Shown here: in pieces, positions 4,718 to 61,922 of the stretch | Layout: every line of letters begins with the position of its first letter | Position numbering within the stretch: the stretch's first letter is position 1 | IMG/VR virus record: IMGVR_UViG_3300023174_000040 | Location: 248,001 to 312,000 of that record | DNA: 64,000 nt | Strand: one strand, 5' to 3' | Program-made: the position numbers and the translations under genes | Notes under the pieces: generated by a model | The model's input: only the letters and a program-made list of their open reading frames with translations | Told to the model about the DNA's origin: nothing | Database searches by the model: none

Positions 4718-6997
4718 ATGCCAACTACAACAATAGCACCAATAGCAAGACCACCTGTGCCTCCTTCTTTGGAAGCCTATGGAGTTCCATTATATCAACC
4801 GAATGATCCATATCATTACGACTTTGACAACAAGCCAATTAAAACTCTAGTGATGAGGGACCAGATAATGTCTGGTCAGATCAACCAGAATTCACAAATA
4901 CTAAGAGAAGGTGCCGGTGATTCAGGTAGTCTCCCTTTGAGACTAGATCGATCTTTGGAAAAGGACGGAAACTTAAAACCAGGAGCAATAGATCAAGCCA
5001 ATCACAGTATAGCGCACCACTCAAATGGAAGTAAGCAAATAACACAAGAAGAAATGGATGAATATAATTCTTTAGGTTATACTTTAAATTCATCACCAGA
5101 TTTCGTGGTTATGTTAAGAGCAGAGAGAGATAAGCTTTCGCAAATAACTGCCGATGCCAATAATATAACATTCCAATTTCCAGGTATGAGCACCCCGGTG
5201 GATGGGGGAACGATAGAATTCCAAGACTCGTATGGAATTTATTGGGAAATTAGCAATCCCTCCGATGAAAACATAGTAATTAAACCCATACTCAATAATG
5301 CCACTGATCACAAACATTTTTATGAAGTTACTCCTGTTTTTGCAAACGGAGAATATCAAATATCTGGTATTCAAGAATTCAAAAAAGATACCTTGAGGGT
5401 ATATGTTAACGGAGTCAGAATACCATCGTGCTCACAGAATTGTTCAGCTTCAGACGGAATATATTATCCTGCATTTAGCTCCACGGTAACAACTCAGCCA
5501 CCACAATTAAAAGCTCCAAATACGCAATGGAATAACTTGTATTTCACAGAGATGAATGATGAAGCAAAATTCACGCTTTCCTCAACCTTATCAAGTTATG
5601 ATAAAATTTTTGTAGACTATGAAATAGAAATAATGCAGTCGGCAACAACCACAACAGCTCGGCCTGTGACCACCACAACTTTGACGCCGACCACAACAAC
5701 TTTATCGCCATTTAATTTAAATTCAATATCTGTCTCGGATGTTACCGGCAATTATCCGAGCATAACAGATATAATAACAGCGGGAAATAGGATACAAATA
5801 ATTAGTGATGGGGATCCTTATCCAGCATTGGCCGGGAATCCATTATTCAATGATGGTTTAATTTCTAGAACCTTCTCGAATTCAAACAGCATAGCTGATC
5901 AAACACACAATTTCTTGTTTACTTATAGGGGAGGTTTGAATAACTCGGAAAATCCCCAAGATACAAGCTTGGGCGCAATAGGAGTCACAGTAAACGGAGT
6001 TGTTTTATTAAATCCATCTGCAGGGTATGGATCACTGCCCGGGGGGACCGACCTACCAGGAACGGGATACCAATTTAATGCTGTTCTCAACAGCTCTTTA
6101 TTTGGTGTTGATGAATGTGGTGGTAGTCCAAATGAAGAAGGAATGTATAGTTATCGTGATGGATCATTCTTGAAAAATTGTTGGAGTGTCAATAAGTTTT
6201 ACGGAAAAAATACCTATTATAGTGGAAGCACCTACCAGGGAGATCATTTTAGACACGGAAACGGACATTCAAAAATAGTAGGATTCTGCTTTGATGGATA
6301 TCCTATTTATGGTCCATACGGCTATTCTAATTCAATGTCCGCCTCCAGCAATGTAGTGCAAATGTTATCCTCCTATAGAACATCTACGACCGAGAAATCT
6401 GGACGTGGTTACTCTTACGACGAATATCCTGCGGGCTCTTTTATAGAAGATTATAATTATATCCAAGCAGACTACATGCCAAATCCATACCTAGATGAGT
6501 ATAATGGAAGATACTGTGTGACGCCAGAATATCCAAATGGCACATATGCTTACTTCTTAACATTTGTAAGCGAAGACTTAAATACACCCGCATATCCCTA
6601 CATATTTGGCCCAAAAACAAGACAGATAAGAGAAACAGGCGGGGATCCACAAAATCAAGGACCAGGACCACACGCATTCTATGTAAACATTACCTCCATC
6701 CCCGGCACAGCTTATGTGCTAAATGGTAAAGATAATAATGGGGTATTATCTGGGAATAATTTATCAATAAATGTCTTGGTTGGTGATGCAATAATACTAA
6801 ATATTTCAACTTCTGGACACCCAGTATGGTTGAAAAAGTATGATGTTACTGGTTCTGGTTCGGATTTAATGGGCATCAATAATAACGGAACAGATGATGG
6901 AACCATAACCTGGGTGCCATCCGAACCAGGGACTTATTACTATATATCAGAAAATAGTTTTGATATGCACGGCAGCATAATAGTAACTTCTTCTTGA
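4718..6997 (+). CDS. Virion-associated protein with Thr-rich linker, YHYH domain and C-terminal cupredoxin-like domain
   Basis: GAIGVTVNGVVLLNP, DECGG, GFCFDGYPIYGPYG, LDEYNGRYCVTPEYPNGTYAYF (YHYH family); GHPVWL...PGTYYY...M at C-terminus. Confidence 0.75.
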   Translation: MPTTTIAPIARPPVPPSLEAYGVPLYQPNDPYHYDFDNKPIKTLVMRDQIMSGQINQNSQILREGAGDSGSLPLRLDRSLEKDGNLKPGAIDQANHSIAHHSNGSKQITQEEMDEYNSLGYTLNSSPDFVVMLRAERDKLSQITADANNITFQFPGMSTPVDGGTIEFQDSYGIYWEISNPSDENIVIKPILNNATDHKHFYEVTPVFANGEYQISGIQEFKKDTLRVYVNGVRIPSCSQNCSASDGIYYPAFSSTVTTQPPQLKAPNTQWNNLYFTEMNDEAKFTLSSTLSSYDKIFVDYEIEIMQSATTTTARPVTTTTLTPTTTTLSPFNLNSISVSDVTGNYPSITDIITAGNRIQIISDGDPYPALAGNPLFNDGLISRTFSNSNSIADQTHNFLFTYRGGLNNSENPQDTSLGAIGVTVNGVVLLNPSAGYGSLPGGTDLPGTGYQFNAVLNSSLFGVDECGGSPNEEGMYSYRDGSFLKNCWSVNKFYGKNTYYSGSTYQGDHFRHGNGHSKIVGFCFDGYPIYGPYGYSNSMSASSNVVQMLSSYRTSTTEKSGRGYSYDEYPAGSFIEDYNYIQADYMPNPYLDEYNGRYCVTPEYPNGTYAYFLTFVSEDLNTPAYPYIFGPKTRQIRETGGDPQNQGPGPHAFYVNITSIPGTAYVLNGKDNNGVLSGNNLSINVLVGDAIILNISTSGHPVWLKKYDVTGSGSDLMGINNNGTDDGTITWVPSEPGTYYYISENSFDMHGSIIVTSS

Positions 6998-13849: not shown

Positions 13850-13852
13850 AAT

Positions 13853-14695
13853 ATGCAAACTAGAACTAAAAAAATAAAAAACAACGAGTTTATAAAGACT
13901 CCAAGTTATAACTTTTGGGTTAGAAACTTTTGTAATTATTCTTGTCCTTACGTTGATATAAATTCCACGACATCTGAAAAAGAATACTTTCTTTTTCTTG
14001 AGAACGAATTCTACAATAATAAAAACAGATATTCATGGATAGATTCAGAAAATATCTATCACCCAACAGTAGCAATAGTATCGGACGGTTATGATTTTGA
14101 AAACTCTCATAAAGTCTTAGAAGATCAAAACGTATGCGTGCTTGCAGTAAATGGAACTCTAAAGAAATGGAAAAACAATAAATCTCCAAATTATTATGTT
14201 GTTAACAATCCATATGATGAATGTTTAAATTATTTGCCAAGAACAAATAGAACTCTCCCCAGATGCATAGCTTCAAGCAAGACTAATCATACTTTTTTAG
14301 AAAGATACAATGGAATAAAATATAAATACTATGCAGTAAATGAAGAGAGGGTAAACTATAGTGGATCAAAAGAAAATATGTATCAAATAGATGATTATAG
14401 AAATGTAATATGCGCTGCCATTAATCTTGCATATAGATTTCAGTGCAAGAAATTACTGTTGTTATCTTGTGATGATTCCTTTATTGAAAATAAGCCGGGT
14501 AGCGTTAAATTAGAAAGCGGCCTATATTCTTATCCTCAACAAAATTTAATATCAGAAATAATAGATTGCTGTCTTCACTGGTTAAAGGGTAAAATGGATA
14601 TAAAATATTATGGGCATTCTAAAAAATTAGATAATGCTGGATACATACAACTTAGTGACGTGAAAGAATTTATAACTGATGAAAACACCATTTGA
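13853..14695 (+). CDS. MptE/DUF115- or sialyltransferase-like fold protein
   Basis: VAIVSDG, VLAVNG, YYVVNNP, ICAAINLAYRFQCKKLLLLSCDDSF. Confidence 0.5.
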   Translation: MQTRTKKIKNNEFIKTPSYNFWVRNFCNYSCPYVDINSTTSEKEYFLFLENEFYNNKNRYSWIDSENIYHPTVAIVSDGYDFENSHKVLEDQNVCVLAVNGTLKKWKNNKSPNYYVVNNPYDECLNYLPRTNRTLPRCIASSKTNHTFLERYNGIKYKYYAVNEERVNYSGSKENMYQIDDYRNVICAAINLAYRFQCKKLLLLSCDDSFIENKPGSVKLESGLYSYPQQNLISEIIDCCLHWLKGKMDIKYYGHSKKLDNAGYIQLSDVKEFITDENTI

Positions 14696-15325: not shown

Positions 15326-15359
15326 ATAATTTTTTATTTTATTAATATATATAACATAT

Positions 15360-15902: not shown

Positions 15903-15904
15903 TA

Positions 15905-16826: not shown

Positions 16827-16827
16827 A

Positions 16828-22726: not shown

Positions 22727-23476
22727 ATGCGTGCAATAATACCAACAAAAAGCGTTACTCTAAAAGAGCTGTTGTCTTCGGGAGAATATAAAGCCAAACT
22801 TTTCACAAACGATCTCGGAGATTGTGAGGACCTGCCTTTGGATTTTGAATTCCAGGAACCAGTTTTTAATGGATATTCTTCTAAATTATTAAATTCAAAT
22901 TTATGGAAATTGAATATTGCAGCTAATAATTATTCACAATGCGATTACCAAGAATCTTTAATTTGGGGAAACACAAATATTGCCCAAAGCGAAGTCATTA
23001 ATGGATATTTTGTAACCAATGGTAAAAACGAAGTGCTTTGGTTTGGAAAATTTGATAACTCAATAGAACTACAACAAAATCAAAAAGTCCTGGTGGATAT
23101 CAGGGTTTATTTAAATAATTATGATTATCCGAAAAATACAATAACAATAGTGGTCAAAGGAGATATAGATAAACCACAAAATACTAATATATTTATAGAT
23201 AATATTAAATGGGGAAGTGTAAGTTATCCTTATGCTTTAATGGATTTGATGGAAAGTGATTGGACCCCCAATCAAAATATCTTGTGCATAGGTGTTGATA
23301 ATACAATAAATATTTGCCACGGAGATCCATTGAGTTTTGATATAACTGTGACAGCCATCGGTTATAGCGAATATAAAGAAAACATAATAATAGAAGAAGT
23401 TGGAAATAAATTTATAGAAATTAATCTAACAACCACAACAGAGGAACCAACCACAACAACTCAAGAACCTGGCTAA
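22727..23476 (+). CDS. Hypothetical, likely structural, protein; paralog of N-terminus of next gene
   Basis: AKLFTNDL.DCED...F.E..F.GYS.K.LN..LW shared with 23479; ends in TTTTEEPTTTT. Confidence 0.6.
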   Translation: MRAIIPTKSVTLKELLSSGEYKAKLFTNDLGDCEDLPLDFEFQEPVFNGYSSKLLNSNLWKLNIAANNYSQCDYQESLIWGNTNIAQSEVINGYFVTNGKNEVLWFGKFDNSIELQQNQKVLVDIRVYLNNYDYPKNTITIVVKGDIDKPQNTNIFIDNIKWGSVSYPYALMDLMESDWTPNQNILCIGVDNTINICHGDPLSFDITVTAIGYSEYKENIIIEEVGNKFIEINLTTTTEEPTTTTQEPG

Positions 23477-31772: not shown

Positions 31773-32581
31773 AAAGAACTGCTTTTTGTTTTACGGGAGA
31801 AGGAGCTAGAGGAAGTATACAAGCGGGAATAGCTTTATCTCTATATGAGAGTAATATAAAACCAGAATTAACAATAGGGATCAGTTCTGGGAGTATATGC
31901 GCAGCTAGTTATGCTTATTTGGGGCCACAAGGTGTTGCAGATATGTGGTCTAATATAAAAAACATATTTGATGTTTTTGGGATTAATTACTTTCCCTGGA
32001 GAAAAACAGGGATGTTAAATCAAAAACCAATGGAAAAAATAGTTTCCAACGCATTAAAGAATACCCCAGTATGTGAAAGTATAGTTTCTAAGTTAAATAT
32101 TCATTCTGGGGAGATGATGTATGTTTCCAATAAAGGAATAACAGCAGATGAGTTTAAGGAAAATGTGCTTTCAAGCGTTGCAATTACAGGACTAGTAGAA
32201 GATAGAAACGGCTGGGTTGATGCCGGCAGTCGCCAATTAGCGCCATTAAAACAATGCATAGATTTAGGATATAACGAAATATATGTGATAATGGGCAGAC
32301 CTTTAACTCTTTCTTATTGGGAAGGCGCAAAGGGAATTTTAAAGCCATTAGAAATGGCCTTTAGAGCACTCGATATTAGTTTGTATGAGATAATGATAAG
32401 AGATATAAATCAACATTTAAATAATAATGATATAGAAATTTATTTAGTAGAACCAGATAAACTATTCTTTGATTCAGTATATTTTAATCAGTGCAAAAAT
32501 GGTGTACAGTATGGAAGAAAAGAATACACGATACATGACAAAAAATCTTTAAGAAATATTTTGCCCAAGATAGTCAATTAA
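31769..32581 (+). CDS. Patatin-like phospholipase
   Basis: GEGARG oxyanion loop, GISSG nucleophile, DAG catalytic Asp. Confidence 0.85.
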   Translation: MKRTAFCFTGEGARGSIQAGIALSLYESNIKPELTIGISSGSICAASYAYLGPQGVADMWSNIKNIFDVFGINYFPWRKTGMLNQKPMEKIVSNALKNTPVCESIVSKLNIHSGEMMYVSNKGITADEFKENVLSSVAITGLVEDRNGWVDAGSRQLAPLKQCIDLGYNEIYVIMGRPLTLSYWEGAKGILKPLEMAFRALDISLYEIMIRDINQHLNNNDIEIYLVEPDKLFFDSVYFNQCKNGVQYGRKEYTIHDKKSLRNILPKIVN

Positions 32582-33301
32582 ATCTTTAGAATCTGACAGA
32601 CCTTTATATTTTTTTTGCTCTTCTGTCATATTATTTATTGTTTTAATCAAGCTTTCTTTGTCTATATCCTCTTCATCAATCAGGTACTGTCTTAAAATAA
32701 AAAGACAAAAACCCTTATCTGGGAATCCTACGGTGACTTGTCTTTCTATTTTTATAAAAACCTTAGGTTCATTCTTGTCAAAATTTATGAATGGAAACCT
32801 TGGATGATAGTTATATTTCCTCTCATGAACCACACTCCAAAGATATCTTTCAAATATCCCAGAGTTTATTATTGCGTTAACTATTTTAGTGCTATTTTTT
32901 AAACTCATTGGAACTGGAGAATGCAACTCATCAAAAGACATGCCTATTTTTTCAGCCGGATTCCAACTACTGGGGAAGCAGACATGTCCACTAGCCATCC
33001 AATCTTTATTATTTTTTATCCTATGAATTATTAGATCTTCATCTATTTCTCTGGCTATATCGATATATTTTCTACTCTGTAGACTTATGGGGTAATTATC
33101 CAGTATGAACCTTTCGCAGGACTCATATATATCTTCAGATATGTGGTTTTCAAAAAAGAATTCTTGCTGAGATAGAGCAATTCTTTTTTCTTTTTGTATA
33201 AATTCAGAATCTTTTCTGTCTTTTTCAAAGACCTGTTCTGGGTTTATCTTCTTTAAATCAGGTAAAGTGCTAAACCCCTTAATATAAGCATGATTTACCA
33301 T
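32549..33301 (-). CDS. DUF3445 / heme-dependent oxidative N-demethylase alpha-subunit-like protein
   Basis: EDLII, HVCFPSSWNPAEKIGMSFDELHSPVP, ERYLWSV, IERQV...LFILR. Confidence 0.7.
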   Translation of the reverse strand: MVNHAYIKGFSTLPDLKKINPEQVFEKDRKDSEFIQKEKRIALSQQEFFFENHISEDIYESCERFILDNYPISLQSRKYIDIAREIDEDLIIHRIKNNKDWMASGHVCFPSSWNPAEKIGMSFDELHSPVPMSLKNSTKIVNAIINSGIFERYLWSVVHERKYNYHPRFPFINFDKNEPKVFIKIERQVTVGFPDKGFCLFILRQYLIDEEDIDKESLIKTINNMTEEQKKYKGLSDSKDLIDYLGQNIS

Positions 33302-34052: not shown

Positions 34053-34276
34053 TTAATTTCTTTCTATTTAAAGTATAAATTATTCAATTCACAAATTAGA
34101 ATACACCACAATTCAATGCTTTTCAATAGCAATTGTTTTTTGTCGTAAGTCCTTATTTTAAAAGCACTTACGACAAAAAAATTATTTAATTATATTTAAA
34201 CATTAAAGTTAATCCCAATAAATCTAAATACAATAGTGTTTTATTCCAGGCTCGATTAAGATATAATAGGGAGATC

Positions 34277-34711
34277 ATGAAAATGAAAAATAAATTTACA
34301 GATTACAAAGATGTAGTTAAAATTCTTAAAAAGCATTGCCCTTTAGCGTATGAAATCAGCGTTAGAAGAGTGGCAATGGGAAGATGTCTTGATGGAGATT
34401 GTGTAAAATATAAAAAGAAATTCTTTATAAGAATTAACAGAGATCTGCCAGAAGATTCTGCTATAGACACTCTTTTACATGAATGGGCACATGCCCGTGC
34501 TTGGAATCATCTACTAGATAACTTGGATAGTCAAGACAAATTCGATGATTTTTCCCACGATGCATCATGGGGAGTTGCATATAGCGAAGTCTATAGACTA
34601 TATCAGAGATACTTTCTATTAAGCACAGATGGAATGAGTAACGTAGATGAATCAACCATGTGCAGTAAAAAAAGATATTGTAGCAGAGGAACAGATCAAG
34701 AAATAATATGA
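34277..34711 (+). CDS. Small SprT-like HExxH metalloprotease-domain protein
   Basis: DGDC...IRIN...DTLLHEWAH...HDASW. Confidence 0.65.
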   Translation: MKMKNKFTDYKDVVKILKKHCPLAYEISVRRVAMGRCLDGDCVKYKKKFFIRINRDLPEDSAIDTLLHEWAHARAWNHLLDNLDSQDKFDDFSHDASWGVAYSEVYRLYQRYFLLSTDGMSNVDESTMCSKKRYCSRGTDQEII

Positions 34712-35511
34712 ATTATTTTGTCTCGGTAGAAGATTCTTACTACCATAATTGGCAACTCGAATTATTGATAGAAAGCTTCAAGGTATTGGGTCTAGAGGAC
34801 AATCTATATATATCGGTGGCTCAGGCAGACAAAGAGTATCTTAAAAATAATAAAAATCTTTCAACACATGCCAATAAATATATTCATAAAAATATAGGCA
34901 GAGAAACAGGTATACTCAAATTAAATAAATGGGGTTCTCTTTACACTCTTATGGAGAACAACATACTAAGTTTACCCGTGACCGTACTAGATCCCGATAC
35001 AGTCATACAAAAAGATATAAAAATACAAGATAAACAATTTATATTTTCTATTGATCCTGACTTTGTTTATAATAAAAGATATGCCAAATTAATTAGACTA
35101 TCAAAAAATGAAATGGATAAATGGCTTAATCTGGGTGAAGTGTTTGTTTTTAATGAATTATCATTAAATTTCTTTAAGGATATGGCAATATTATGTCAAA
35201 TGGTGGGATTGGATCCAAACAAATATCAAGTTGATAAAGCGGCATTATTTGCAACTTTGTGCAAACATAAAGTCAGTAAAATATTAGCCAGTAATGATAT
35301 CGAAGGAAATCTAATAGAGAGTCAATTAAAAGATATAATAAGCTATAGGCATGGAGTTAATCCCATGTTTAATAAAAAACTATATAAAAGTAATGATATG
35401 AATTTCTCCATGGCATCCGATAATCCAATAAATCTTTTATCTAAAATGGACCACACCCCTTCTTTAGAGTATGTGTCCAAGATTGCAAAGAGAATTATAA
35501 ACCGAATATAA
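34708..35511 (+). CDS. Putative GT-A glycosyltransferase resembling peptidyl O-glycosyltransferases
   Basis: SVEDSYYHNWQLELLIESF, LNKWGSL, VLDPDTVI (DxD). Confidence 0.5.
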   Translation: MNYFVSVEDSYYHNWQLELLIESFKVLGLEDNLYISVAQADKEYLKNNKNLSTHANKYIHKNIGRETGILKLNKWGSLYTLMENNILSLPVTVLDPDTVIQKDIKIQDKQFIFSIDPDFVYNKRYAKLIRLSKNEMDKWLNLGEVFVFNELSLNFFKDMAILCQMVGLDPNKYQVDKAALFATLCKHKVSKILASNDIEGNLIESQLKDIISYRHGVNPMFNKKLYKSNDMNFSMASDNPINLLSKMDHTPSLEYVSKIAKRIINRI

Positions 35512-35785
35512 TTGTTTCTGGCTTGTCGTCTATCCAGACATCAATATTCACACCAAGTTTATCGACAACATCTTTTTTAGGAAGATGATTGCAGAATATC
35601 ACATCTTCTATTAATTCCAAAGAAGACCCAAAGCTACCCTGCACTTCATCTATATTTTTTTGTTCTTCTGTCCGGGCAGTTACACAAAAAACTCGGTGGC
35701 CTCTAGAGGTTGCCTTAAGAATAAACCACTTCCAAAATATTGGATCTTCTGTGAAAGTGTTGTCAAAATCTAAAGAAAAAACCAT
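35495..35785 (-). CDS. Small HAD-family hydrolase
   Basis: SLDFDNT, VTAR, WIDDKP. Confidence 0.8.
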   Translation of the reverse strand: MVFSLDFDNTFTEDPIFWKWFILKATSRGHRVFCVTARTEEQKNIDEVQGSFGSSLELIEDVIFCNHLPKKDVVDKLGVNIDVWIDDKPETIIFGL

Positions 35786-36210
35786 TATATTCCTTTTAGC
35801 ATCTGTCTTATCTCATCCAAATCTTTCCTGCTATCTTCCATCTGTTTTTCCAAAAATATAACTACCCAATAACTATTAAGATCGTTTATTTTTTCAGCAT
35901 CAGCTATTCTCTGATAATAGTTATTTATAACCTCTTCTTCCATTTTTGCTGCGTATTCTAGAATTTCTCTTGGATCGCTCAAGGATGGAAAATCATTCGG
36001 CACCTTTGCAGGAGAGCCCCCAAGCCCAGTAATAAGATCAGAGAATTGCACGATGTGTTGCATTTCACTGGCCGCCTGTTCCAGCAGCCATTCTTTGTAT
36101 TCTTTTGCGTGCAAACCAACTATGTTGCTTGCATTATGAAGATAAAAACAATGATGTTTCCACTCATTTTTAAGGTCTTGATTTATTCTTTCAACCAAAG
36201 CATTAATCAT
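35785..36210 (-). CDS. Ferritin-like (bacterioferritin/Dps-fold) protein
   Basis: DLKNEW, EMQH, MEEEVI..Y, EDS..DL di-iron helix pattern. Confidence 0.75.
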   Translation of the reverse strand: MINALVERINQDLKNEWKHHCFYLHNASNIVGLHAKEYKEWLLEQAASEMQHIVQFSDLITGLGGSPAKVPNDFPSLSDPREILEYAAKMEEEVINNYYQRIADAEKINDLNSYWVVIFLEKQMEDSRKDLDEIRQMLKGI

Positions 36211-36294: not shown

Positions 36295-36813
36295 ATGAAA
36301 ACATTTAATGAGTTTATTGAACAAAAAAATATCAACACACTAGTTGAGAGTATTGCGGGTCTTATGGTTGAGATGGACATCAATCCCGCTGAATATATTT
36401 TAGAAAATGCTCCTGAGACGGAACTTGATGAAGGTTTCATGGATAGTCTGAAGGCATTTGGTAAAAACGCCTGGAGTGCGGCCAAACAATTTGGCAAAAA
36501 TGTTTGGGACGGTGGCGGTATCAGAGGTGGTGCTGCTCAAGCAGCCGATACATTAGCCGGCCCTGCTTCGAAGTTTGATTCTGCTGCAAGAGTTTTAACT
36601 GATCTTGTGAATCAACTTCAAAAAAATCCACAAACTGCAAGTATGCCATCTTCGACCAATCCAAGACAAACAGTCGCTTCTTATCTTGGCGGAATTCTAA
36701 AGGGACTAATGAAGGAGAAAGAGAACATTCCAAAAATGCAGGATGCCCAAGTTTCTATGCCAATGGCTCCAAGAGGTCCAGGTGCTCCCGCTCCTGCCCC
36801 TGCAACTCCTTGA
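36295..36813 (+). CDS. Putative internal head protein (MKTFNEFIE leader)
   Basis: Leader close to T4 MKTYQEFIAE; GAGG RBS. Confidence 0.6.
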   Translation: MKTFNEFIEQKNINTLVESIAGLMVEMDINPAEYILENAPETELDEGFMDSLKAFGKNAWSAAKQFGKNVWDGGGIRGGAAQAADTLAGPASKFDSAARVLTDLVNQLQKNPQTASMPSSTNPRQTVASYLGGILKGLMKEKENIPKMQDAQVSMPMAPRGPGAPAPAPATP

Positions 36814-37375
36814 TTTTAAACCTATATTTTTCATAACACTCATTTGCTTTTTCAAGAATAGTGTTGCTGATGTTGAAGTCAGCAACACTATTTTCTTTTC
36901 TGATATTGAATTCTTCTTTTAAACCCAAGAACTCTTGAATTTTCTTGTAAGTTTCAGGCAGGGTAAACTCCTCGTCAAAATAGACTTTAAAGTTTTGCTT
37001 GGGAGTTTTTCTTATCATTTCATAGATCTTGCGAAGCCTAAAACAATAATAGTTTAAACACGACTCTGAGCTGTACATTTTATTCCCGATTAGATTTGGC
37101 ATCACTAATCTTGGCTTATTTACAAGATAAATAAATTTACAAAAATTTAATAAAGGAGCAAAACAGAATTGATGATTATAATAAAGAGGATCCATATAGA
37201 TATGAGGATTTTTTCTATATCCGCTTCTAATAGATCCTAGAGAAAAAAGATTATTTATATCTTTGTATAACTGCAAGTCTATTTTTTGTATTCTCTTATT
37301 AGTGTTCAACGTATCAACTAAAACATTATTTTCTCTATAGTGCGTAATCACCAATAATAGTTCTTTTTTCTGCAT
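36755..37375 (-). CDS. Degenerate sulfotransferase-fold protein
   Basis: KFIYLVNKPR and YKKIQEFLGL resemble sulfotransferase elements; PAPS loop not canonical. Confidence 0.35.
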   Translation of the reverse strand: MQKKELLLVITHYRENNVLVDTLNTNKRIQKIDLQLYKDINNLFSLGSIRSGYRKNPHIYMDPLYYNHQFCFAPLLNFCKFIYLVNKPRLVMPNLIGNKMYSSESCLNYYCFRLRKIYEMIRKTPKQNFKVYFDEEFTLPETYKKIQEFLGLKEEFNIRKENSVADFNISNTILEKANECYEKYRFKIKELQGQEREHLDLLEPLA

Positions 37376-37406
37376 AAAATAATAGAGAGAAAACAATAGA
37401 TAAAAT

Positions 37407-37967
37407 ATGCTTAACTTCAAAACATTCTTAGAAAATCTTGAACATTCAAAAAATGATATTCACAAGATCGTTCAATACAGCGAAAAATTATTAGGTATGG
37501 TCAAACCCAAAGAGGAACTCGAAGATTGGGTTAAAGCAAAACTAACTCATACCGAGGATTATCTCAATACAGTTCTTGATTATTTAAAATACTACAAACA
37601 ACAAAATGAAGACAATAACAGAATGGCCATGGGAGATCTAAGAAGCATTCATGAAAAAGCAAAAGAAATAGAAAAAATACTTAGCAAAGAAAAAGAACTA
37701 AAAGACTGGATTAAATCAAAACTAAATTTAGCGGGTGAGTATATGGATGATGTGTTTCATCACCTGGATTATAATAAAAAAGAAGGATTCGTAAACCAGA
37801 GTATGCCAGATCCAGAAAATGAGCGTGCTCCAAAAGCAAGTGAGTATTCTGCCGATCCCTACATGAGCATAGATGACCTACCGCCCACACCATTTTCCCG
37901 ACATCGGGAAAATCTAAAATACAAGAATAAAATGAAGAAAAAAGCCGATCAACTAAAAAATAATTGA
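37407..37967 (+). CDS. Internally duplicated helical protein (MLNFKTFLE leader)
   Basis: ELEDWVKAKLTHTEDYL and ELKDWIKSKLNLAGEYM repeats. Confidence 0.6.
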   Translation: MLNFKTFLENLEHSKNDIHKIVQYSEKLLGMVKPKEELEDWVKAKLTHTEDYLNTVLDYLKYYKQQNEDNNRMAMGDLRSIHEKAKEIEKILSKEKELKDWIKSKLNLAGEYMDDVFHHLDYNKKEGFVNQSMPDPENERAPKASEYSADPYMSIDDLPPTPFSRHRENLKYKNKMKKKADQLKNN

Positions 37968-47373: not shown

Positions 47374-47838
47374 TTACGCATGAGTTGGAGTTGGTGTTGG
47401 AGTACTACGAGTTGGAGTTGGAGTAACTGTGCGAGTTGGAGTTGGAGTAACTGTGCGAGTTGGTGTTGGTGTTGGTGTTGGTGCCATGCAAACCCCGCTT
47501 ACGCAGGTATATCCTGCTGGACAAGCGTTTCCACAACTTCCGCAATTACTTTCATCGTTTGTTAAATTAACGCAAACACTATCACAGAGGGTTTCCGAGT
47601 TAGAACAATCTCCTCTTGCTTCAACAAATTCACTTGGAATAATTTGGGCTAAGTATTCTCCTCCATCAGATACCGTTATTACTTCTCCATCTTTTTTGGA
47701 AACAATCTTTTTTCCATCATAATCAACCATATTTAAAGTTCTCTGAATACTGTTTCCGTTTAATATAGCTGTATCTAATCCGCCTTCCGAGGCTAGGTTT
47801 TTGAGTAATGGGCTGAGTTCTAAATTTGAGTCTGACAT
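47374..47838 (-). CDS. Protein with STIG1/myxobacterial-type Cys-rich motif and Pro/Thr tail
   Basis: CDSVCVNLTNDESNCGSCGNACPAGYTCVSGVC then PTPT repeats. Confidence 0.7.
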   Translation of the reverse strand: MSDSNLELSPLLKNLASEGGLDTAILNGNSIQRTLNMVDYDGKKIVSKKDGEVITVSDGGEYLAQIIPSEFVEARGDCSNSETLCDSVCVNLTNDESNCGSCGNACPAGYTCVSGVCMAPTPTPTPTRTVTPTPTRTVTPTPTRSTPTPTPTHA

Positions 47839-47899: not shown

Positions 47900-50233
47900 T
47901 CAGGGAGCCACTGTTGTGGTTGTGGGAGCCACTGTTGTTGTTGGGGCCGTCGTGGTGGTTGTCACCGGTGCAGCAGACACAACCTTTGAAGGATACGAAT
48001 AAAGCATCTGTGAACAGACCGTTGATGCAGGAATCCATGCTCCCTTCTTTGATGATCCGCTTAGTACTCCTGCTTTTAACTTAGTACCTGGATCAATGAA
48101 CTTCCAAGTCGAACATCCACAAGAATTTAAAGTGGATCCTATTTTTAAATCTTTATTATGCTTCAAACATCTTATATTAGTGTTACAAATAGTGCTACCA
48201 CAAGATTTAGGTTCTTCCGCTACAATAATAAAAGGCTCAGTTATGGTATCTAAGAATTTTTGTGCTACATCCCCCATTTCAGATGTCATCATCTGACTTC
48301 CGTCGAGTTTAGACATTATTATAGAATATATTTCTTTTCTGTCGCCTATTCCATCAATTGCATGATCGTCATAATTTGTTGATTCGTCATAAAGATGAGT
48401 AATTCCATCGCTGTTGCCTGGAACGATTATTAAATGAGTGGGCGCTACTTCCTCTTGTGCTGCTTCTACGGTCTTAGCAAACACAGTGTAATCATTCGAT
48501 CCAGATATTATTGATAAAACAGCCACTGAATAACTAGTTCCTCCGTCTGCGCCAATATCTCCAGTTATACTAAATTGAGTAATGTCTATATTTGTAGCCA
48601 CTAAAACAAACATACCAGGATACATGGAAGTGAAATATTGACTTCCTTCTCCGAAATAATCTGTTCCGTCTTCTATTGTGCTGTCGAAATATATTGGTGA
48701 ATAAATATTCTTTGAAGCACCTCCTGCTGCCCATTGAGGACCAAAAGAAACTTCATTGGGCATCTGGGTGTGGGTGGAAGGAATGGAAAGATCATAATCT
48801 ACTTCATCTTCTTTAATATCATCATAGATTTGAGTTAGATTGGTATTAAAGAAATTACCGCCATCATACATATCAAATCCGCCATCATCAATACCGGTTA
48901 CTAATGGCATATATTCGGATCCAAAGGATCCTGGGGCTCCTGATGAATTTAATTTAACATAGTATCTTTTTGGTTTAATAAAATATCCACCAATCCATAT
49001 ATCGCCAGAAGATACTTGATATATATCATTTACTGATGGGTAGTATGAATTATTATCTATTTGATTACTAGATCGATTATTTCCATAGAAATCATTTGCT
49101 CCACCAAAAGAACTGTCTAGTGATCCATCTGAATTAATTTTACAGATGTTATTTCTAACTGATGGTGTGTCTCCGGGATATCCGAAAGCATTGAAATTAC
49201 CACCAACAATCATTTTTCCATCATCTAAAAGTTCAATCTTTGTTATATAGGGAGGATAGAAATTTTCCTCACCATAATATCCAGCTGGGATGTAGTAAGC
49301 AATTCCAGGATTTTGTGCTCCTTGTGCGTCTAAACCAAAAGATGTATCTATATAGCCATTTTCATTTATTCTACATATGCTATATAGTGTTGTGGTTATT
49401 CCAGTATCTGAGATTACACTAAAATTTCCGCCCACTATTATCTTATTATCATCTTGAACCGCAACTGTTTTCAAGAAACTCTCGTTATTGAAAGCGGGGG
49501 GAATAAACGTATCATCTTCAATCCATGTTGAAGTTCCACTATCATATACATATCTGATAATATGTTTATCTTCTAAATTATATCCTACTGCAATTAATCT
49601 TTCCTCAGAGTCTATTGCAACATCATATACTGCGTCAAAGTTAGAGTTTGCTTCTATCGGGACTTGAGTTCCATCATCATTTAGGATCATAATTCTAGAA
49701 GTGAACCGGCCAGCCACTACCGAAGTATTGTCACTTAAGGCTAGAATTTTATTCACAACTCCATCTATTGCGCCATTTAATGTAGAATCAAAACTGGCGT
49801 CAAAGACACCATTTGAATCAAATTTGGCAATATAGTGTGAAGTTTGTGTTGTAATAGATCCGTCTACAGAATGATTGTAGAACCAACCACCTAATAATAT
49901 TTTTCCATTAGGTTGGACGGCAACAGTGTAGATAGAATCACTAAATCTTATGGCGGGAAATGTTTCATCTCGGACACCGTTTTGGCTTATTTTCAATACC
50001 TCTGAGTAGCAACATTCCCAGTTAGCATCTGGTATTCCGTCTACAAACCCTTCTCCGGCCAAAAGCATATCTCCATCATCATGCTGGGTAATGCTATTCA
50101 CTCTACTAGTGTTACATTGACAACTTATGTAGTTTTCAACTTCATCTGTGAAATAATTCAGATCCGGTGCCATTGCAGTTATTTCTGCGTGATCAGAATT
50201 TAGCCTATCTAGTGCGTTCTGTATGTTCAACAT
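47900..50233 (-). CDS. Delta-60-repeat beta-propeller protein with Thr-rich tail
   Basis: IYTVAVQPNGKILLGGWF, VAVQDDNKIIVGGNF, INSDGSLDSSF repeats. Confidence 0.75.
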   Translation of the reverse strand: MLNIQNALDRLNSDHAEITAMAPDLNYFTDEVENYISCQCNTSRVNSITQHDDGDMLLAGEGFVDGIPDANWECCYSEVLKISQNGVRDETFPAIRFSDSIYTVAVQPNGKILLGGWFYNHSVDGSITTQTSHYIAKFDSNGVFDASFDSTLNGAIDGVVNKILALSDNTSVVAGRFTSRIMILNDDGTQVPIEANSNFDAVYDVAIDSEERLIAVGYNLEDKHIIRYVYDSGTSTWIEDDTFIPPAFNNESFLKTVAVQDDNKIIVGGNFSVISDTGITTTLYSICRINENGYIDTSFGLDAQGAQNPGIAYYIPAGYYGEENFYPPYITKIELLDDGKMIVGGNFNAFGYPGDTPSVRNNICKINSDGSLDSSFGGANDFYGNNRSSNQIDNNSYYPSVNDIYQVSSGDIWIGGYFIKPKRYYVKLNSSGAPGSFGSEYMPLVTGIDDGGFDMYDGGNFFNTNLTQIYDDIKEDEVDYDLSIPSTHTQMPNEVSFGPQWAAGGASKNIYSPIYFDSTIEDGTDYFGEGSQYFTSMYPGMFVLVATNIDITQFSITGDIGADGGTSYSVAVLSIISGSNDYTVFAKTVEAAQEEVAPTHLIIVPGNSDGITHLYDESTNYDDHAIDGIGDRKEIYSIIMSKLDGSQMMTSEMGDVAQKFLDTITEPFIIVAEEPKSCGSTICNTNIRCLKHNKDLKIGSTLNSCGCSTWKFIDPGTKLKAGVLSGSSKKGAWIPASTVCSQMLYSYPSKVVSAAPVTTTTTAPTTTVAPTTTTVAP

Positions 50234-58200: not shown

Positions 58201-58563
58201 CCAAACATAGCAAGCGTGAACGTAAGCGGACTAAGGAACCTGAGCTACATAGACATTTCAAACAATGGCGGGACCCCGTCCCTAGAGTCGGTTTTGGCCT
58301 ATGGCTTCGGAACATGGGCGGGATACAATGGAAAGGCAAATTTCCGCATAATATACGGTTATGACAACAATATGGATATGACTGCGTGGGTGGAATTCTT
58401 TGAGTCTCTGGGCGATGGCACCGCCGGCGGAAGTAAGAATTACATCAATGCGTTGACAAGCGGATGCACGGTACAAGATGCAATCAACTATATGATAAAC
58501 AACCACGTCTCCTGGGAGATGGGCGACGTGGGATGGTATATAGAAACGGGGAGCGACTGCTAA
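55279..58563 (+). CDS. Large fibre/receptor-binding-like protein with LamG-like, beta-helix and LRR-like segments
   Basis: GDFTIE...HVAMTR...IFVNG...LREFRV; LQTLNLS/LSYIDIS LRR-like. Confidence 0.65.
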   Translation: MANLEQYTPIYIKSSGNDSTGDGSSGNPYLTAQKAFEVAYAGTGLKVLDFTEGNFGGVNLNGFSDWPSRIAVRGVDSQSSVLGGIIGASKKISIISDKTVEIGEISGGSTVLTDCKAGKVNSASISLIDSDVVGLNSSRTSCSGKAKGLGGGNILGPSRTEKVSLLLHMGGSRENIATFTDYSIDTKNIKVKGNTRIITGVYTCNGSSWPHCGYFPPPAQQSCFFDGNGSYLETKEEKDFGFGRGDFTIESKIYIPYDSWGTTGTIFNLGGGIKLRTYGAESLVIDGETYNWYPGDNIPIDQEVHVAMTRKGGEFNIFVNGERVFQLTGVSVDLGRSNILRIGAGEEDGMEAFYLYGYLREFRVVKGRAVYSGEFLPPTEALSVIVEDHPSLDSRTLYFNNIANDNSWTNLNNWWSDEACTVHSSSLPGEHDKVVVRGAAFDGINVTVRKLTMFADGNIPSHTSFKNSTINARNGIFAITTGAGYVESGGSGFASTCALNGNVFFFESDATQGTMSAQVDGNLTVGGCDVGVNVYVSGSVIVKGDCTNFGHVGKNLIVELGGFGNGNGAVHPTIEGNAIFIGGRGLVATADGSPSPGNWGAINGNAEFYLGAVNAGNVYGKAYFHDSSNGGTLHNGATFVSTVGGAAMNWLRDENGEGSGAFGLINGTTKIYGAGYVGGSGSFFDDVHLYDGVILTNTFKPPLIEGNIYCHDNSTLGSVACPSDVYFYDNSHGNMSYSPGLNSDWLLATYGTPDWEGWSEGQYRPINGYDPPNLRSDFYVGSCALYGNSTLGDFLVLNDLTLNGESGMTQYNVTATTGGDQGLRHGVLESGTRVEGRIICNTTGDCYPDILSLTVNAGHTGYKTFIVGGCSYVNVKINGNISTIEGSSVDLSYIINQFELTGFLNITIQPCSMDGNPTWERITSFITYQALNFITGVGSLRGMNRIGTLDLINIQNPELDVLSLKSLQTLNLSGPNIASVNVSGLRNLSYIDISNNGGTPSLESVLAYGFGTWAGYNGKANFRIIYGYDNNMDMTAWVEFFESLGDGTAGGSKNYINALTSGCTVQDAINYMINNHVSWEMGDVGWYIETGSDC

Positions 58564-59252
58564 TGAACTACTTCAAGACACCAAGCAACAAATACCTCGC
58601 CTTTATCCCTAGGTCGGGAAGCACAAGTTTCGCAAGGGCCATAGTAACCCAATTCTATCCGGAACTCCTTCCGAGGCTCGAGAAAAAACATCCTAACAAA
58701 ACGGATCCAAAGCCCCAGTTCATCTGCCCGTCCAGCAGCTTTCCTGACGGGGACGCCTATGCCCTCATAAGGGACCCGGTGGAAAGGTTCAGGAGCGGAT
58801 TTTCAAGGGCAAATTTCGGAAGGACCGTGGACGAGGTGATAGAAGACCTTTTCAAGGGCGAATGCATAATGAACGTTCACATCGAACCGCAGAGCAACAG
58901 GATAAAACACCAAAAGGACATAAAGTGCTTCAAGTTCCCAGAGGGAATAAACGCACTTTCGGAGGCACTTGGGATGACGCCACCCGAGCAGGAAAATGAA
59001 AGCGAGGACGGCGAGAAGCCGAATCTCACGCAGAAGCAAATAGACAATTTAAGAAAATACTATTTTAAGGACGTGGAACTGTATGAGAATGCGAGTGTAG
59101 AATACACACCAACCACAACAGAACCAACCACAACAGAACCAACCACAACAGAACCAACCACAACAGAACCAACCACAACAGAACCAACCACAACAGAACC
59201 AACAAACATTAATGATGAAGTGGATATGCCCAGATTATTTAAAGGAAAATAA
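58563..59252 (+). CDS. Sulfotransferase (Sulfotransfer_2-like) with PTTTE tail
   Basis: IPRSGSTS (5'-PSB), IRDPVERFRSG (3'-PB), HIEPQS, YYFKDVELY. Confidence 0.75.
   Translation: MNYFKTPSNKYLAFIPRSGSTSFARAIVTQFYPELLPRLEKKHPNKTDPKPQFICPSSSFPDGDAYALIRDPVERFRSGFSRANFGRTVDEVIEDLFKGECIMNVHIEPQSNRIKHQKDIKCFKFPEGINALSEALGMTPPEQENESEDGEKPNLTQKQIDNLRKYYFKDVELYENASVEYTPTTTEPTTTEPTTTEPTTTEPTTTEPTTTEPTNINDEVDMPRLFKGK
59109..59198 (+). repeat. Perfect 15-nt tandem repeat CCAACCACAACAGAA x6 (PTTTE)
   Basis: Read directly from sequence. Confidence 0.95.
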
Positions 59253-60700: not shown

Positions 60701-61921
60701 ATGGCGAACATTGTTTTTAGTGATCCTTTTAATTTAAGAGCGAGATACGGTGCACCCAATTCTTTATCCTGGGATCAGAGAAATTTAGATTACATAGCAA
60801 AAATTGAATCAGCGAGAAACTACAAAGTATCATCGGCATCTCAAACCGCACCAGGAACACAAAACAGATCAAACTACACCAGTTGCGTAGACAATTATCA
60901 TTGTTTCTGGAATGGGGTAGGATGGACAGTAATACCAGCATGCTCATCCAGTTGGATAGGAGGTATGACCTTAATGCAAGTCACTCCCACTCCCACAGTG
61001 ACAAAAACAAGTACTCCAACTTTAACTCCAACTAAAACGCCTACTCCTACTTTAACAAATACTCCTACACCAACCAATACTAAAACATTAACTCCAACTA
61101 AAACTTCCACCCCCACTTTAACACCAACCAGAACTTCCACTCCCACCCCAACATCAACCCCAACATTAACTCCTACCAAAACAAGCACACCCACATTAAC
61201 CAGCACTCCTACTCTAACAATAGCTCCTCCAGCAATAGTGGAAGCATCCTTGCCATTCTATGATGATTTCAACAGACAAAATAACCCTTACATATCAGGT
61301 TATTGGCGTGAACGCATAGGAAATTTTATAATATCTAATAATTCTGCGGTGGGCGTGGATCCATCCATCTCTTTAATGACACTTAATGGAATAAGAGAAA
61401 AAGATTCTTTTATTAGTTGTTATGTGGATTTAATAAATTCATCGATACCTACGGGAGCAGCAAGATCATATATGCCTGTGGGTTCAGGAGGAGGAATTAT
61501 AACTAGATATACAGCCGATCCATATGGAGTATTTGGTGATGGGTATATGTATTTGGGAATGATTGCAAAAAATGGAACTACATATTACGGTCAAATATGG
61601 TCCAACAATGGATCATGGTCATTACTAAGTTCATCACCAATAAATTCTACAAACACCGTAGGCGTACTAGCTTTTAAAACATTGGGAAGTTCTTTAACAC
61701 TGTATTTTAATAATACACAAATAGTTTCTGTCATTAATACAAGCATCCCAGGATATGGTGGTATAGGCATAAGGGCTTTGGGCGCCAATTGTATTTTCGA
61801 CAACATGCAGGTTAGTTCAATATCAAATTATAATAGATCTAGAGATATTGATCAAAATTATATTAATTGGGGATTATTAAGAATGATAAATCAAAATAAT
61901 ATTTCAGGATGGGGTGAATAA
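60701..61921 (+). CDS. Protein with long TPTPT linker and beta-sandwich (lectin/GH-like) domain
   Basis: About 80 aa Thr/Pro repeat followed by DDFNR...FDN beta domain. Confidence 0.6.
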   Translation: MANIVFSDPFNLRARYGAPNSLSWDQRNLDYIAKIESARNYKVSSASQTAPGTQNRSNYTSCVDNYHCFWNGVGWTVIPACSSSWIGGMTLMQVTPTPTVTKTSTPTLTPTKTPTPTLTNTPTPTNTKTLTPTKTSTPTLTPTRTSTPTPTSTPTLTPTKTSTPTLTSTPTLTIAPPAIVEASLPFYDDFNRQNNPYISGYWRERIGNFIISNNSAVGVDPSISLMTLNGIREKDSFISCYVDLINSSIPTGAARSYMPVGSGGGIITRYTADPYGVFGDGYMYLGMIAKNGTTYYGQIWSNNGSWSLLSSSPINSTNTVGVLAFKTLGSSLTLYFNNTQIVSVINTSIPGYGGIGIRALGANCIFDNMQVSSISNYNRSRDIDQNYINWGLLRMINQNNISGWGE

Positions 61922-61922
61922 C

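What the first reader, a model, noticed from the sequence alone, without database searches (positions are those of the whole stretch)
34708..35511. Candidate protein O-glycosylation system: peptidyl glycosyltransferase-like gene plus many mucin-like Thr/Pro linkers
Seen: SVEDSYYHNWQ...SF, LNK, and LDPD (DxD) recall plant SERGT1/HPAT (GT96/GT95) motifs from memory. At least nine proteins carry Thr/Pro tracts (4718, 9143, 22727, 23479, 25679, 47374, 47900, 58563, 60701), and a second GT-like and two sulfotransferase-like genes are present. Inference: the phage glycosylates and perhaps sulfates its own virion linkers, giving protease resistance or host-surface mimicry.
Basis: inference. Interest (0 to 1): 0.6.

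Follow-up and report, generated by a model that had tools for sequence, protein, structure and literature searches.

The report
Huge-phage HPAT-like glycosyltransferase, target unknown
The gene is a real sugar-transferring enzyme from an unnamed family carried by a whole clade of huge phages and shaped most like plant peptide-glycosylating enzymes, but comparison with related genomes does not support the idea that its job is to glycosylate the phage's Thr/Pro-rich linkers.

Summary

The protein belongs to an unnamed family of about 290 clusters at 50% identity. The family occurs in a clade of huge phages with a T4-like capsid. In 28 of 58 related loci, and in the window, a SprT-like zinc peptidase gene sits directly upstream. 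In most relatives, tRNA nucleotidyltransferase and HAD_SAK_1 RNA-repair genes are also adjacent.

Thr/Pro tracts are real in this genome: 18 of 360 ORFs carry one, against 1.7 after shuffling. However, three large genomes that carry the enzyme (527, 436 and 340 kb) have essentially none. A P4H-type oxygenase does not co-occur with the enzyme either.

Verdict: the glycosyltransferase call and the HPAT resemblance are supported. The "virion linker glycosylation and sulfation system" is untested here, and comparative data weaken it as the family's general role. The most likely function is a cytoplasmic, retaining, protein- or peptide-directed glycosyltransferase with an unknown acceptor.

The parts
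34708..35511 (+). GT-A fold glycosyltransferase (267 aa) of an unnamed phage family. Motifs: an N-terminal strand-helix (residues 2-25: the strand NYFVS, the conserved Y12, W15 and Q16, then LELLIESFK in the helix), D95-P-D97 after strand 4, and Y213-x-x-G216-x-x-P219-x-F221-x-K223.
34277..34711 (+). SprT-like zinc metallopeptidase (144 aa) with invariant H68-E69-x-x-H72 and H94. It overlaps the glycosyltransferase start by 4 nt (ATGA), forming a conserved two-gene cassette.
   Evidence: Weak Pfam SprT-like hit, E 0.0032; the same family annotation appears on the orthologue in L001. Alignment A4. Directly upstream on the same strand in 28 of 58 loci.
34140..34176 (.). Inverted repeat (11-bp arms, ttgtcgtaagt / acttacgacaa) flanked by a T run and an A run, in the divergent intergenic region upstream of the cassette. 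It resembles a two-way terminator. A GGAGA ribosome-binding site lies at 34270-34274.
   Evidence: Read directly from the sequence. The simple terminator scan did not list it.
36755..37420 (-). Sulfotransferase-like protein (221 aa) 1.2 kb downstream of the glycosyltransferase. The usual PAPS-binding loop was not recognised by eye.
   Evidence: Atlas structure TM 0.75-0.77 to Sulfotransfer_3 clusters and feature score 0.95. No Pfam sulfotransferase hit.
58563..59252 (+). Sulfotransferase-like protein (229 aa from the ATG at 58563) with PRSGSTS and RDPVERFRS motifs and a C-terminal (PTTTE)x6 tail. The tail is encoded by a perfect 15-bp x 6.4 tandem repeat at 59108-59203.
   Evidence: Translation. 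Tandem repeat with 100% matches. Weak Sulfotransfer_2 hit, E 0.012, below the cut-off.
4718..6997 (+). Virion-structural-like protein (YHYH domain) with an internal Thr/Pro tract at aa 316-329.
   Evidence: PHROG virion structural / baseplate wedge families and Pfam YHYH. Tract.
22727..23476 (+). 249-aa protein with a C-terminal TTTTEEPTTTTQEP tail.
47374..47838 (-). 154-aa Cys-rich (Stig1-like) protein with C-terminal TPTPTPT tracts.
47900..50233 (-). 777-aa beta-propeller (DUF5122) protein with a C-terminal Thr/Pro tail at aa 754-775.
60701..61921 (+). 406-aa protein with about 80 residues of TPTxTPT repeats (aa 93-165).
13853..14695 (+). Unconfirmed.
   Evidence: Pfam PF01973, 27.1 bits against a cut-off of 34.6. 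AF2 model unusable, pLDDT 44.

Best explanation
ORF 34708-35511 encodes a soluble, cytoplasmic glycosyltransferase with the GT-A fold. It is most likely metal-dependent and retaining in type. It belongs to an unnamed family of about 290 clusters at 50% identity, which is a near-constant accessory gene of a clade of huge phages with a T4-like capsid. Its nearest named relatives in shape are HPAT (GT95)-like peptide glycosyltransferases.

Proposed mechanism (inferred). During infection the enzyme takes a host nucleotide-sugar. It binds the nucleotide through the N-terminal strand-helix (E8, D/N9, Y12, W15, Q16) and the D95-x-D97 metal site. It then transfers one sugar to a hydroxyl group of a protein or peptide acceptor. 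It is made together with a SprT-like zinc peptidase from an overlapping two-gene cassette.

The acceptor is unknown. The Thr/Pro tails of this phage's proteins are possible acceptors here, but they cannot be what the family as a whole exists for.

Shown: the fold, the motifs, the family distribution and the gene linkage. Inferred: the donor, the retaining chemistry, a protein acceptor and any tie to the peptidase.

HPAT likeness: Atlas clusters carrying PF23452 reach TM 0.75-0.79, closer than clusters carrying GT8 (0.70) or Nucleotid_trans (0.62-0.63). One of 44 family members hits HPAT at E 0.0014. In two related genomes the only HPAT-model hit lies inside the orthologue.

Protein or peptide bias of the neighbours: these include a bacterial cluster that joins HPAT to PqqD, and a phage cluster that joins GlcNAc (PF11397) to O-FucT. 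PqqD is a peptide-recognition element of RiPP pathways (established knowledge).

Cytoplasmic: strand 1 starts at residue 2, which leaves no room for a signal peptide or membrane anchor.

Family size and conservation. Motif conservation.

Cassette: the SprT-like gene lies directly upstream in 28 of 58 loci, including the window, where the rest of the synteny is lost.
Against: No sequence model (Pfam, NCBIfam, PHROG with a named function, or PDB) names the protein.

In the window's protein, the position that matches the metal-binding His of GT8 enzymes is Ser. The family has H or D there in 40 of 53 sequences.

The first Asp of DxD is not conserved.

The conserved neighbours are RNA-repair genes: tRNA nucleotidyltransferase and a HAD_SAK_1 phosphatase. 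This leaves room for a non-protein acceptor.

Complex prediction of the peptidase with the enzyme gave no verdict.

No biochemical data exist.
Confidence: 0.5

Rival explanations
1. The enzyme is the initiating peptidyl O-glycosyltransferase for the mucin-like Thr/Pro linkers and tails of this phage's virion proteins, possibly followed by sulfation. This would give protease resistance or surface mimicry.
For: Thr/Pro tracts are strongly enriched in this genome: 18 of 360 ORFs against 1.7 shuffled. They are also dense in the closest relative that carries a similar enzyme: G305 has 80 pattern hits in 144 kb, with the enzyme 35% identical. The nearest named relative by capsid protein, LR756511, lacks both the enzyme and the tracts. 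The closest structural families act on Pro-rich peptides. Two sulfotransferase-like genes exist in the window. Phage virion glycosylation has a precedent in mycobacteriophages Che8 and Rita (PMC11256854, citing Freeman 2023).
Against: The enzyme is retained in genomes with essentially no Thr/Pro tracts. G317 (527 kb, 100% complete) has 0 hits even with a loose pattern. G307 (436 kb) has 0 strict and 6 loose hits, and G318 (340 kb) has 0 strict and 5 loose, all needing the maximum 2 mismatches. G000 has 191 loose hits. In most relatives the gene sits among non-structural and RNA-repair genes. One tract-bearing protein is itself an enzyme, the sulfotransferase-like 58563, not an obvious virion part. 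No virion or glycan data exist.
Confidence: 0.15
2. The enzyme works on nucleic acid: it glycosylates a modified DNA base or a tRNA/RNA as part of the phage's RNA-repair or anti-restriction tool kit.
For: In 59 of 60 loci a tRNA nucleotidyltransferase (PolyA_pol) gene lies within 10 kb and usually within two genes. The common order is PolyA_pol, HAD_SAK_1, SprT-like, glycosyltransferase. The adjacency survives an inversion of PolyA_pol. Other relatives have RNA ligase, PARG and tRNA_lig_CPD genes nearby.
Against: In the window's own genome the two PolyA_pol genes are 50-77 kb away. Family proteins are mostly acidic, with median pI 5.9. The best structural matches are protein- and glycan-directed transferases, not the known DNA glucosyltransferases. 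The synteny may only reflect a conserved genome layout within one clade.
Confidence: 0.12
3. The enzyme modifies a host envelope glycan (LPS, capsule or a teichoic-like polymer) to block superinfection. This is the role proposed for many jumbo-phage glycosyltransferases.
For: Structural matches include LgtC, WbbM, TarP and TarS. The jumbo-phage survey PMC7824862 assigns phage glycosyltransferase clusters to surface modification. The genome holds four further GT2 genes.
Against: The gene is not in a sugar-activation or polysaccharide cluster, either in the window or in relatives. It is a single conserved gene across the clade, not the patchy, polymorphic pattern described for such clusters.
Confidence: 0.12
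4. The protein is a catalytically dead or repurposed GT-A fold, for example a sugar-nucleotide binder or a scaffold for the peptidase.
For: Ser replaces the His/Asp at position 212 in the window's subgroup, and the first Asp of DxD is variable in the family.
Against: The window's copy has a full D-P-D. D97, the nucleotide-binding N-terminal motif and the G216/P219/F221/K223 block are conserved across about 290 clusters, which indicates purifying selection on the active site.
Confidence: 0.06

Closest known systems
Hydroxyproline O-arabinosyltransferases (HPAT, CAZy GT95, Pfam PF23452) of plants and green algae, and their bacterial look-alikes
   Same: HPAT-bearing clusters are the closest named predicted structures, at TM 0.75-0.79 over residues 1-267. 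Weak HPAT-model hits fall on orthologues and on one family member. GT95 is predicted to have a GT-A-type fold (PMC8476585).
   Different: The window's protein gives no HPAT hit at all, and no family member reaches the 23.9-bit cut-off. It has no membrane anchor or lumenal setting, since strand 1 begins at residue 2. At about 270 aa it is much shorter than the algal proteins of 510-630 aa. A P4H partner is not co-conserved. The donor sugar is unknown.
Retaining GT-A enzymes of the GT8 type: glycogenin, LgtC and the Skp1 alpha-galactosyltransferase (PDB 1zcu, 3u2t, 1g9r, 6mw8)
   Different: Sequence identity is 12-13%. There is no PF01501 hit. Rmsd is 3.7-4.0 A. The late His is Ser in the window's protein.
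Virion glycosylation by phage-encoded glycosyltransferases in mycobacteriophages Che8 and Rita
   Same: A phage encodes glycosyltransferases and could modify its own structural proteins in the host cytoplasm. Several tracts here are C-terminal tails.
   Different: In those phages the glycans were shown on capsid proteins (PMC11256854, citing Freeman 2023). Here no modification is shown, the enzyme family is different, and the gene is not placed with structural genes in most relatives.
Chlorovirus PBCV-1 A064R capsid glycosyltransferase (PDB 2p6w)
   Different: Identity is 8%. The match is no better than to many unrelated GT-A families. A064R is one domain of a multi-domain protein (my own knowledge).
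GT60-type polypeptide GlcNAc transferases (Pfam PF11397, the Skp1 Hyp GlcNAc transferase family)
   Same: A phage cluster that carries PF11397 plus O-FucT domains matches at TM 0.77-0.78.
   Different: No PF11397 match was found anywhere in this genome. The matching proteins are about 1005 aa and multi-domain.

Membership tests
GT-A fold glycosyltransferases (superfamily) | A single Rossmann-like alpha/beta/alpha domain with a central mixed sheet | tested here: met
GT-A fold glycosyltransferases (superfamily) | A DxD-type metal-binding motif after strand 4 | tested here: met
   D95-P-D97 follows strand 91-94 in the model. D97 is kept in 44 of 53 sequences (H in 6). Position 95 is variable.
GT-A fold glycosyltransferases (superfamily) | A second, C-terminal metal or phosphate ligand (His or Asp) | tested here: inconclusive
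   Position 212 is H or D in 40 of 53 family members but Ser in the window's protein. H215 is nearby and is H in 37 of 53.
GT-A fold glycosyltransferases (superfamily) | Sugar transfer from a nucleotide-sugar | not testable with these tools
   Needs an enzyme assay.
HPAT / CAZy GT95 (Pfam PF23452) | A match to the family model at or above its cut-off (23.9 bits) | tested here: not met
   No hit at E up to 10 for the window's protein or genome. The best in the family are 15-17 bits on two orthologues and one member at E 0.0014.
HPAT / CAZy GT95 (Pfam PF23452) | The same three-dimensional domain | tested here: met
   TM 0.75-0.79 by query to four clusters in which 55-100% of members carry PF23452. 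Both sides are predicted models.
HPAT / CAZy GT95 (Pfam PF23452) | A type II membrane protein acting in a secretory compartment | tested here: not met
   The catalytic strand 1 starts at residue 2, with no N-terminal hydrophobic segment.
HPAT / CAZy GT95 (Pfam PF23452) | A hydroxyproline acceptor supplied by a prolyl 4-hydroxylase | tested here: inconclusive
   A PF13640 oxygenase exists in this genome next to Thr/Pro-rich ORFs. It is absent from 3 of 4 near-complete genomes that carry the enzyme and present in a relative without the enzyme. A host enzyme cannot be excluded.
SERGT1 / CAZy GT96 | Sequence or fold relationship to peptidyl serine alpha-galactosyltransferase | not tested
   No GT96 sequence or model was reachable with the tools. 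One survey predicts that GT96 has a fold other than GT-A (PMC8476585), which would argue against membership.
CAZy GT8 (Pfam PF01501) | A match to the family model | tested here: not met
Phage virion O-glycosylation system (enzyme plus acceptor tracts) | The enzyme and its proposed acceptor tracts occur together across related genomes | tested here: not met
   Genomes G317, G307 and G318 carry the enzyme and have no hits to the strict Thr/Pro pattern. With the loose pattern they have 0, 6 and 5 hits, all at the maximum 2 mismatches, while G000 has 191.
Phage virion O-glycosylation system (enzyme plus acceptor tracts) | Glycans attached to virion proteins | not testable with these tools
   Needs virions and mass spectrometry.

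The most novel reading that the evidence does not exclude
In this phage and its nearest kin, an HPAT-like cytoplasmic peptide glycosyltransferase, a P4H-type oxygenase and two sulfotransferase-like enzymes together would build extensin- or mucin-like glycosylated, perhaps sulfated, Thr/Pro tails on virion and accessory proteins. That would be a plant-cell-wall-style protein modification pathway running inside a bacterium under phage control.
Probability: 0.1. Interest if true: 0.75.

Novelty: new member of a known kind. Interest (0 to 1): 0.4.

Why it matters
The gene defines a sizeable family of phage glycosyltransferases (about 290 clusters at 50% identity) that no curated library names. The family is conserved across a clade of huge phages with genomes up to about 670 kb.

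Its nearest look-alikes are enzymes that start O-glycosylation of Pro-rich peptides in plants and algae. It also travels with a small zinc peptidase.

Finding its acceptor would show whether huge phages glycosylate their own proteins or host proteins during infection. It would also give a soluble bacterial-world model for the structurally unsolved GT95 family.

As it stands, this is a well-supported annotation plus an open question about the substrate. It is not a demonstrated new system.

Tried and rejected
Family scans of the target gave nothing useful. Pfam had no hit at E up to 10. PHROGs gave only an unnamed family at E 0.003. NCBIfam gave nothing. A PDB sequence-profile search gave nothing. 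tblastn against 50,697 phage records gave nothing.

Profile-profile comparison with HPAT was not possible, because no HPAT sequence could be fetched. The PF23452 model found nothing in the window's genome, in three MAGs or in 301 genomes of one bacterial phylum. A last word search with a loose E-value returned only family members without Pfam labels.

Collecting GT8 genes for hhalign failed because my E-value limit (1e-20) was too strict. The motif correspondence to GT8 therefore rests on reading the motifs, not on an alignment.

Complex prediction of the SprT-like protein with the enzyme gave no verdict (score 0.00). This is no evidence either way.

AF2 of the MptE-like candidate for the 'second GT' gave pLDDT 44 and was not searched further.

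No PF11397 (GlcNAc) match was found in the genome.

The 96-aa ORF convergent with the enzyme (35495-35785) has a DFDNT motif of HAD type but is not related to the HAD_SAK_1 neighbours of other loci.

I considered that the enzyme evolves unusually fast: 26-35% identity where capsid proteins are 81-86% identical. I rejected this, because its operon neighbours diverge similarly. Median pairwise identity is 29% for the enzyme, 35% for PolyA_pol and 36% for HAD_SAK_1.

A clean two-by-two test (enzyme present or absent against tracts present or absent) within the clade was not possible. Every large record of the clade that I sampled carries the enzyme, and smaller records are fragments.

No reads tools were used. 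No genetic code other than table 11 was needed.

Full report
**What is there.** The window is bases 248001-312000 of a 323,267-bp IMG/VR virus record that CheckV estimates to be 64% complete. Its GC content is about 36%. The window encodes a T4-type large terminase (26475-28247) and a gp23-like major capsid protein (42950-44374). That capsid protein is 75% identical to the one in the 595-kb uncultured huge phage LR756511.1 and 81-97% identical to those of many IMG/VR records. The reported ORF, 34708-35511 (+), 267 aa, is real. It lies in an island of mixed-strand accessory genes between the terminase and the portal/capsid module. The island includes a patatin-like gene, a HODM-like gene, a SprT-like gene, the target, a ferritin-like gene and a sulfotransferase-like gene.

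**The observation.** All the quoted motifs are present. Most are conserved in an alignment of 53 family members:
- W15, Q16, L19, L20, S23, G216, P219 and F221 are invariant.
- F24, N73, Y213 and K223 are nearly so.
- D97 is kept in 44 of 53 sequences.
- The first Asp of 'DPD' (position 95) is variable.

The Thr/Pro tracts are also real. Six of the nine named genes pass a strict screen, one is moderate and two have only short Thr runs. Genome-wide, 18 of 360 ORFs carry such tracts, against 1.66 on average after shuffling each protein. The tracts include runs of 30 consecutive Thr. Several are C-terminal tails rather than inter-domain linkers: 22727, 47374, 47900 and 58563.

**What the protein is.** No curated sequence library names it. 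The word search found 14 and then 83 unnamed metagenomic relatives. Because the family scans left the protein open, I ran the exhaustive profile search once. It found 290 representatives at 50% identity with E up to 1e-3, of which 192 were below 1e-30. Nearly all of the 150 listed are single-domain proteins of about 240-330 aa.

An AlphaFold model built on the family alignment is confident, at pLDDT 87 and pTM 0.88. It has a GT-A fold:
- Foldseek against PDB gives E 4e-7 at probability 1.00 to GT6 blood-group transferases.
- The viral structure hits are glycosyltransferases too.

Strand 1 starts at residue 2, so there is no signal peptide or membrane anchor. The enzyme would act in the host cytoplasm. 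D95-P-D97 follows strand 4, as the DxD motif does in GT-A enzymes. The best solved matches are all retaining enzymes, so I infer retaining chemistry. This is not shown.

**The HPAT lead.** In the ESM Atlas, after unnamed phage clusters at TM 0.83-0.84, the nearest named clusters carry Pfam PF23452 (HPAT):
- green-algal proteins at TM 0.75-0.79;
- an Acidobacteriota-dominated cluster at 0.78;
- a Pseudomonadota cluster that joins HPAT to PqqD at 0.75-0.76.

These are closer than clusters with GT8 (0.70) or Nucleotid_trans (0.62-0.63) labels.

Sequence-level support is faint but specific. One of 44 family members hits HPAT at E 0.0014. In 2 of 33 related genomes, the only HPAT-model hit in the whole record (15-17 bits, E about 3e-4 per genome) falls inside the orthologue of this gene (coordinates checked).

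The window's own protein gives no HPAT hit, and nothing in the family reaches the cut-off. I therefore file it as HPAT-like, not as a GT95 member. GT96 could not be tested. A published survey predicts a fold other than GT-A for GT96, and a GT-A-like fold for GT95 (PMC8476585).

**Gene context.** I fetched 59 IMG/VR loci, 3 loci from contigs binned as bacterial MAGs, and one ENA locus, and clustered their ORFs. These records are the same phage clade as the window. The capsid proteins of several of them are 81-86% identical to the window's, while the enzyme is only 26-35% identical. That divergence is ordinary for its operon neighbours.

Two linkages stand out:
- **SprT-like peptidase.** A small SprT-like gene is directly upstream on the same strand in 28 of 58 loci. 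Its product has an intact H-E-x-x-H...H zinc site. In the window the two genes overlap by 4 nt, and this pairing survives there even though the rest of the synteny is lost.
- **RNA-repair genes.** In 59 of 60 loci a tRNA nucleotidyltransferase (PolyA_pol) gene lies within 10 kb. The usual order is PolyA_pol, HAD_SAK_1 phosphatase, SprT-like, glycosyltransferase, or the PolyA_pol gene is convergent with the enzyme. In the window's genome the two PolyA_pol genes are 50-77 kb away.

Complex prediction for the peptidase and the enzyme gave no verdict.

**Testing the 'system' idea.** If the family exists to glycosylate Thr/Pro tracts, genomes with the enzyme should have tracts. I used a DNA pattern of eight consecutive Thr/Pro codons, calibrated on the window's genome, where it marks 9 regions. 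With it, 22 of 34 records carrying the enzyme have hits, but several large ones have none:

| Record | Size | Completeness | Strict hits | Loose hits |
|---|---|---|---|---|
| G317 | 527 kb | 100% | 0 | 0 |
| G307 | 436 kb | 85% | 0 | 6 |
| G318 | 340 kb | 69% | 0 | 5 |
| G000 (window's genome) | 323 kb | 64% | 76 | 191 |

The loose pattern is ten codons with up to two mismatches. All the hits in G307 and G318 need the full two mismatches.

On the other side, the closest relative by enzyme sequence (G305) is very tract-rich, and LR756511 has neither the enzyme nor the tracts. So the tracts may be acceptors in this sub-lineage, but they are not what the family is conserved for.

A P4H-type oxygenase (PF13640) does sit beside Thr/Pro-rich ORFs elsewhere in this genome. 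However, it is absent from 3 of 4 near-complete genomes with the enzyme and present in LR756511. An obligatory hydroxyproline route is therefore not supported.

The two sulfotransferase-like genes are plausible. Nothing links them to the enzyme beyond proximity. One of them carries a (PTTTE)x6 tail itself, so the tracts are not confined to obvious virion parts.

**Most likely mechanism.** The protein is a soluble GT-A enzyme that uses a host nucleotide-sugar and a divalent metal at D95/D97. It puts a sugar on a hydroxyl group of a protein or peptide during infection, and it is co-expressed with a zinc peptidase.

A protein or peptide acceptor is favoured because the closest structural families act on peptides or proteins. 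These are HPAT, the PqqD-HPAT fusions, GT60-type GlcNAc transferases, the Skp1 transferase and glycogenin. The family is also mostly acidic, with median pI 5.9. I put this at about 0.5.

The rivals are:
- a nucleic-acid or tRNA acceptor, suggested by the RNA-repair neighbours (0.12);
- host envelope glycan modification, as proposed for many jumbo-phage glycosyltransferases (PMC7824862) (0.12);
- a dead or repurposed fold (0.06).

**Novelty and verdict.** Phage-encoded GT-A glycosyltransferases and phage virion glycosylation are known (PMC11256854, citing Freeman 2023; PDB 2p6w). What is new is a large, unnamed, HPAT-like family conserved across a huge-phage clade and its cassette with a SprT-like peptidase. 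I rate it a new member of a known kind, with moderate interest (0.4). The extensin- or mucin-like modification pathway remains a low-probability but attractive reading. The decisive work is a donor and acceptor screen on the recombinant protein and mass spectrometry of the tract-bearing proteins.

Noticed in passing
window 16756-17832 (+), with 16095-16826 (+) just upstream: A strong match to the Volactin actin-homologue family (Pfam PF25216, E 6.5e-62, full length). A GIY-YIG/NUMOD3 homing-endonuclease gene precedes and slightly overlaps it. An actin-like protein in a huge phage may bear on intracellular organisation.
   Followed up: no
window 58563-59252 (+); repeat at 59108-59203: A sulfotransferase-like protein with both PAPS-type motifs carries a C-terminal (PTTTE)x6 tail. 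The tail is encoded by a perfect 15-bp x 6.4 tandem repeat, which suggests recent expansion. The longer ORF call from 58464 overlaps the end of the 1094-aa gene 55279-58563.
   Followed up: partly
window 36755-37420 (-): A second sulfotransferase-like protein, by Atlas structure (TM 0.75-0.77) and features. It has no Pfam hit, and I did not see the usual PAPS-binding loop.
   Followed up: partly
G000:C1:210644-210976 (+), outside the window: A P4H-type 2OG-Fe(II) oxygenase (PF13640, E 9.6e-9) lies directly beside two Thr/Pro-rich ORFs, 210986-213967 and 213974-215362. It is not co-conserved with the glycosyltransferase.
   Followed up: partly
G000:C1:199295-202387 (+) and 12241-16428 (+), outside the window: Extreme poly-Thr runs of up to 30 consecutive Thr, and proteins with nine separate Thr/Pro tracts.
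   Followed up: no
loci L001-L063, about 10 kb around the glycosyltransferase: A conserved block sits next to the enzyme in nearly all relatives but not in the window. It comprises a tRNA nucleotidyltransferase, a HAD_SAK_1 phosphatase, and unnamed families of about 440, 172, 163, 180 and 118 aa, with a very large protein (up to 2263 aa).
   Followed up: partly
L002 (546-kb contig), L003, L004: Contigs binned as Bacteriovoracaceae, Neisseriaceae and Chloracidobacterium MAGs carry the same SprT-like/glycosyltransferase cassette and phage synteny. They are probably huge-phage DNA binned with bacteria.
   Followed up: no
window 13853-14695 (+): A sub-threshold MptE-like (Maf-type) domain lies directly after two large genes (9143-11491, which carries a PKD domain, and 11510-13849). 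It is conserved at 58-90% identity in seven related records. The structure model failed.
   Followed up: partly
window 28264-28680 (-), repeats at 28271-28500: A 9-bp and 18-bp tandem repeat array (about 14 copies) lies inside a 138-aa ORF next to the terminase gene. It probably encodes an acidic low-complexity protein.
   Followed up: no
window 31769-33301 and 35785-36210: Accessory genes around the cassette: a patatin-like phospholipase (also recurrent near the enzyme in 18 loci), a HODM-alpha-like protein (PF11927, E 1.8e-22) and a ferritin-like protein (E 3.3e-19).
   Followed up: no
window 61914-64000 (+), runs off the window: A subtilase (Peptidase_S8) protein of 851 aa with a TTPPTITFPPPP stretch.
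   Followed up: no
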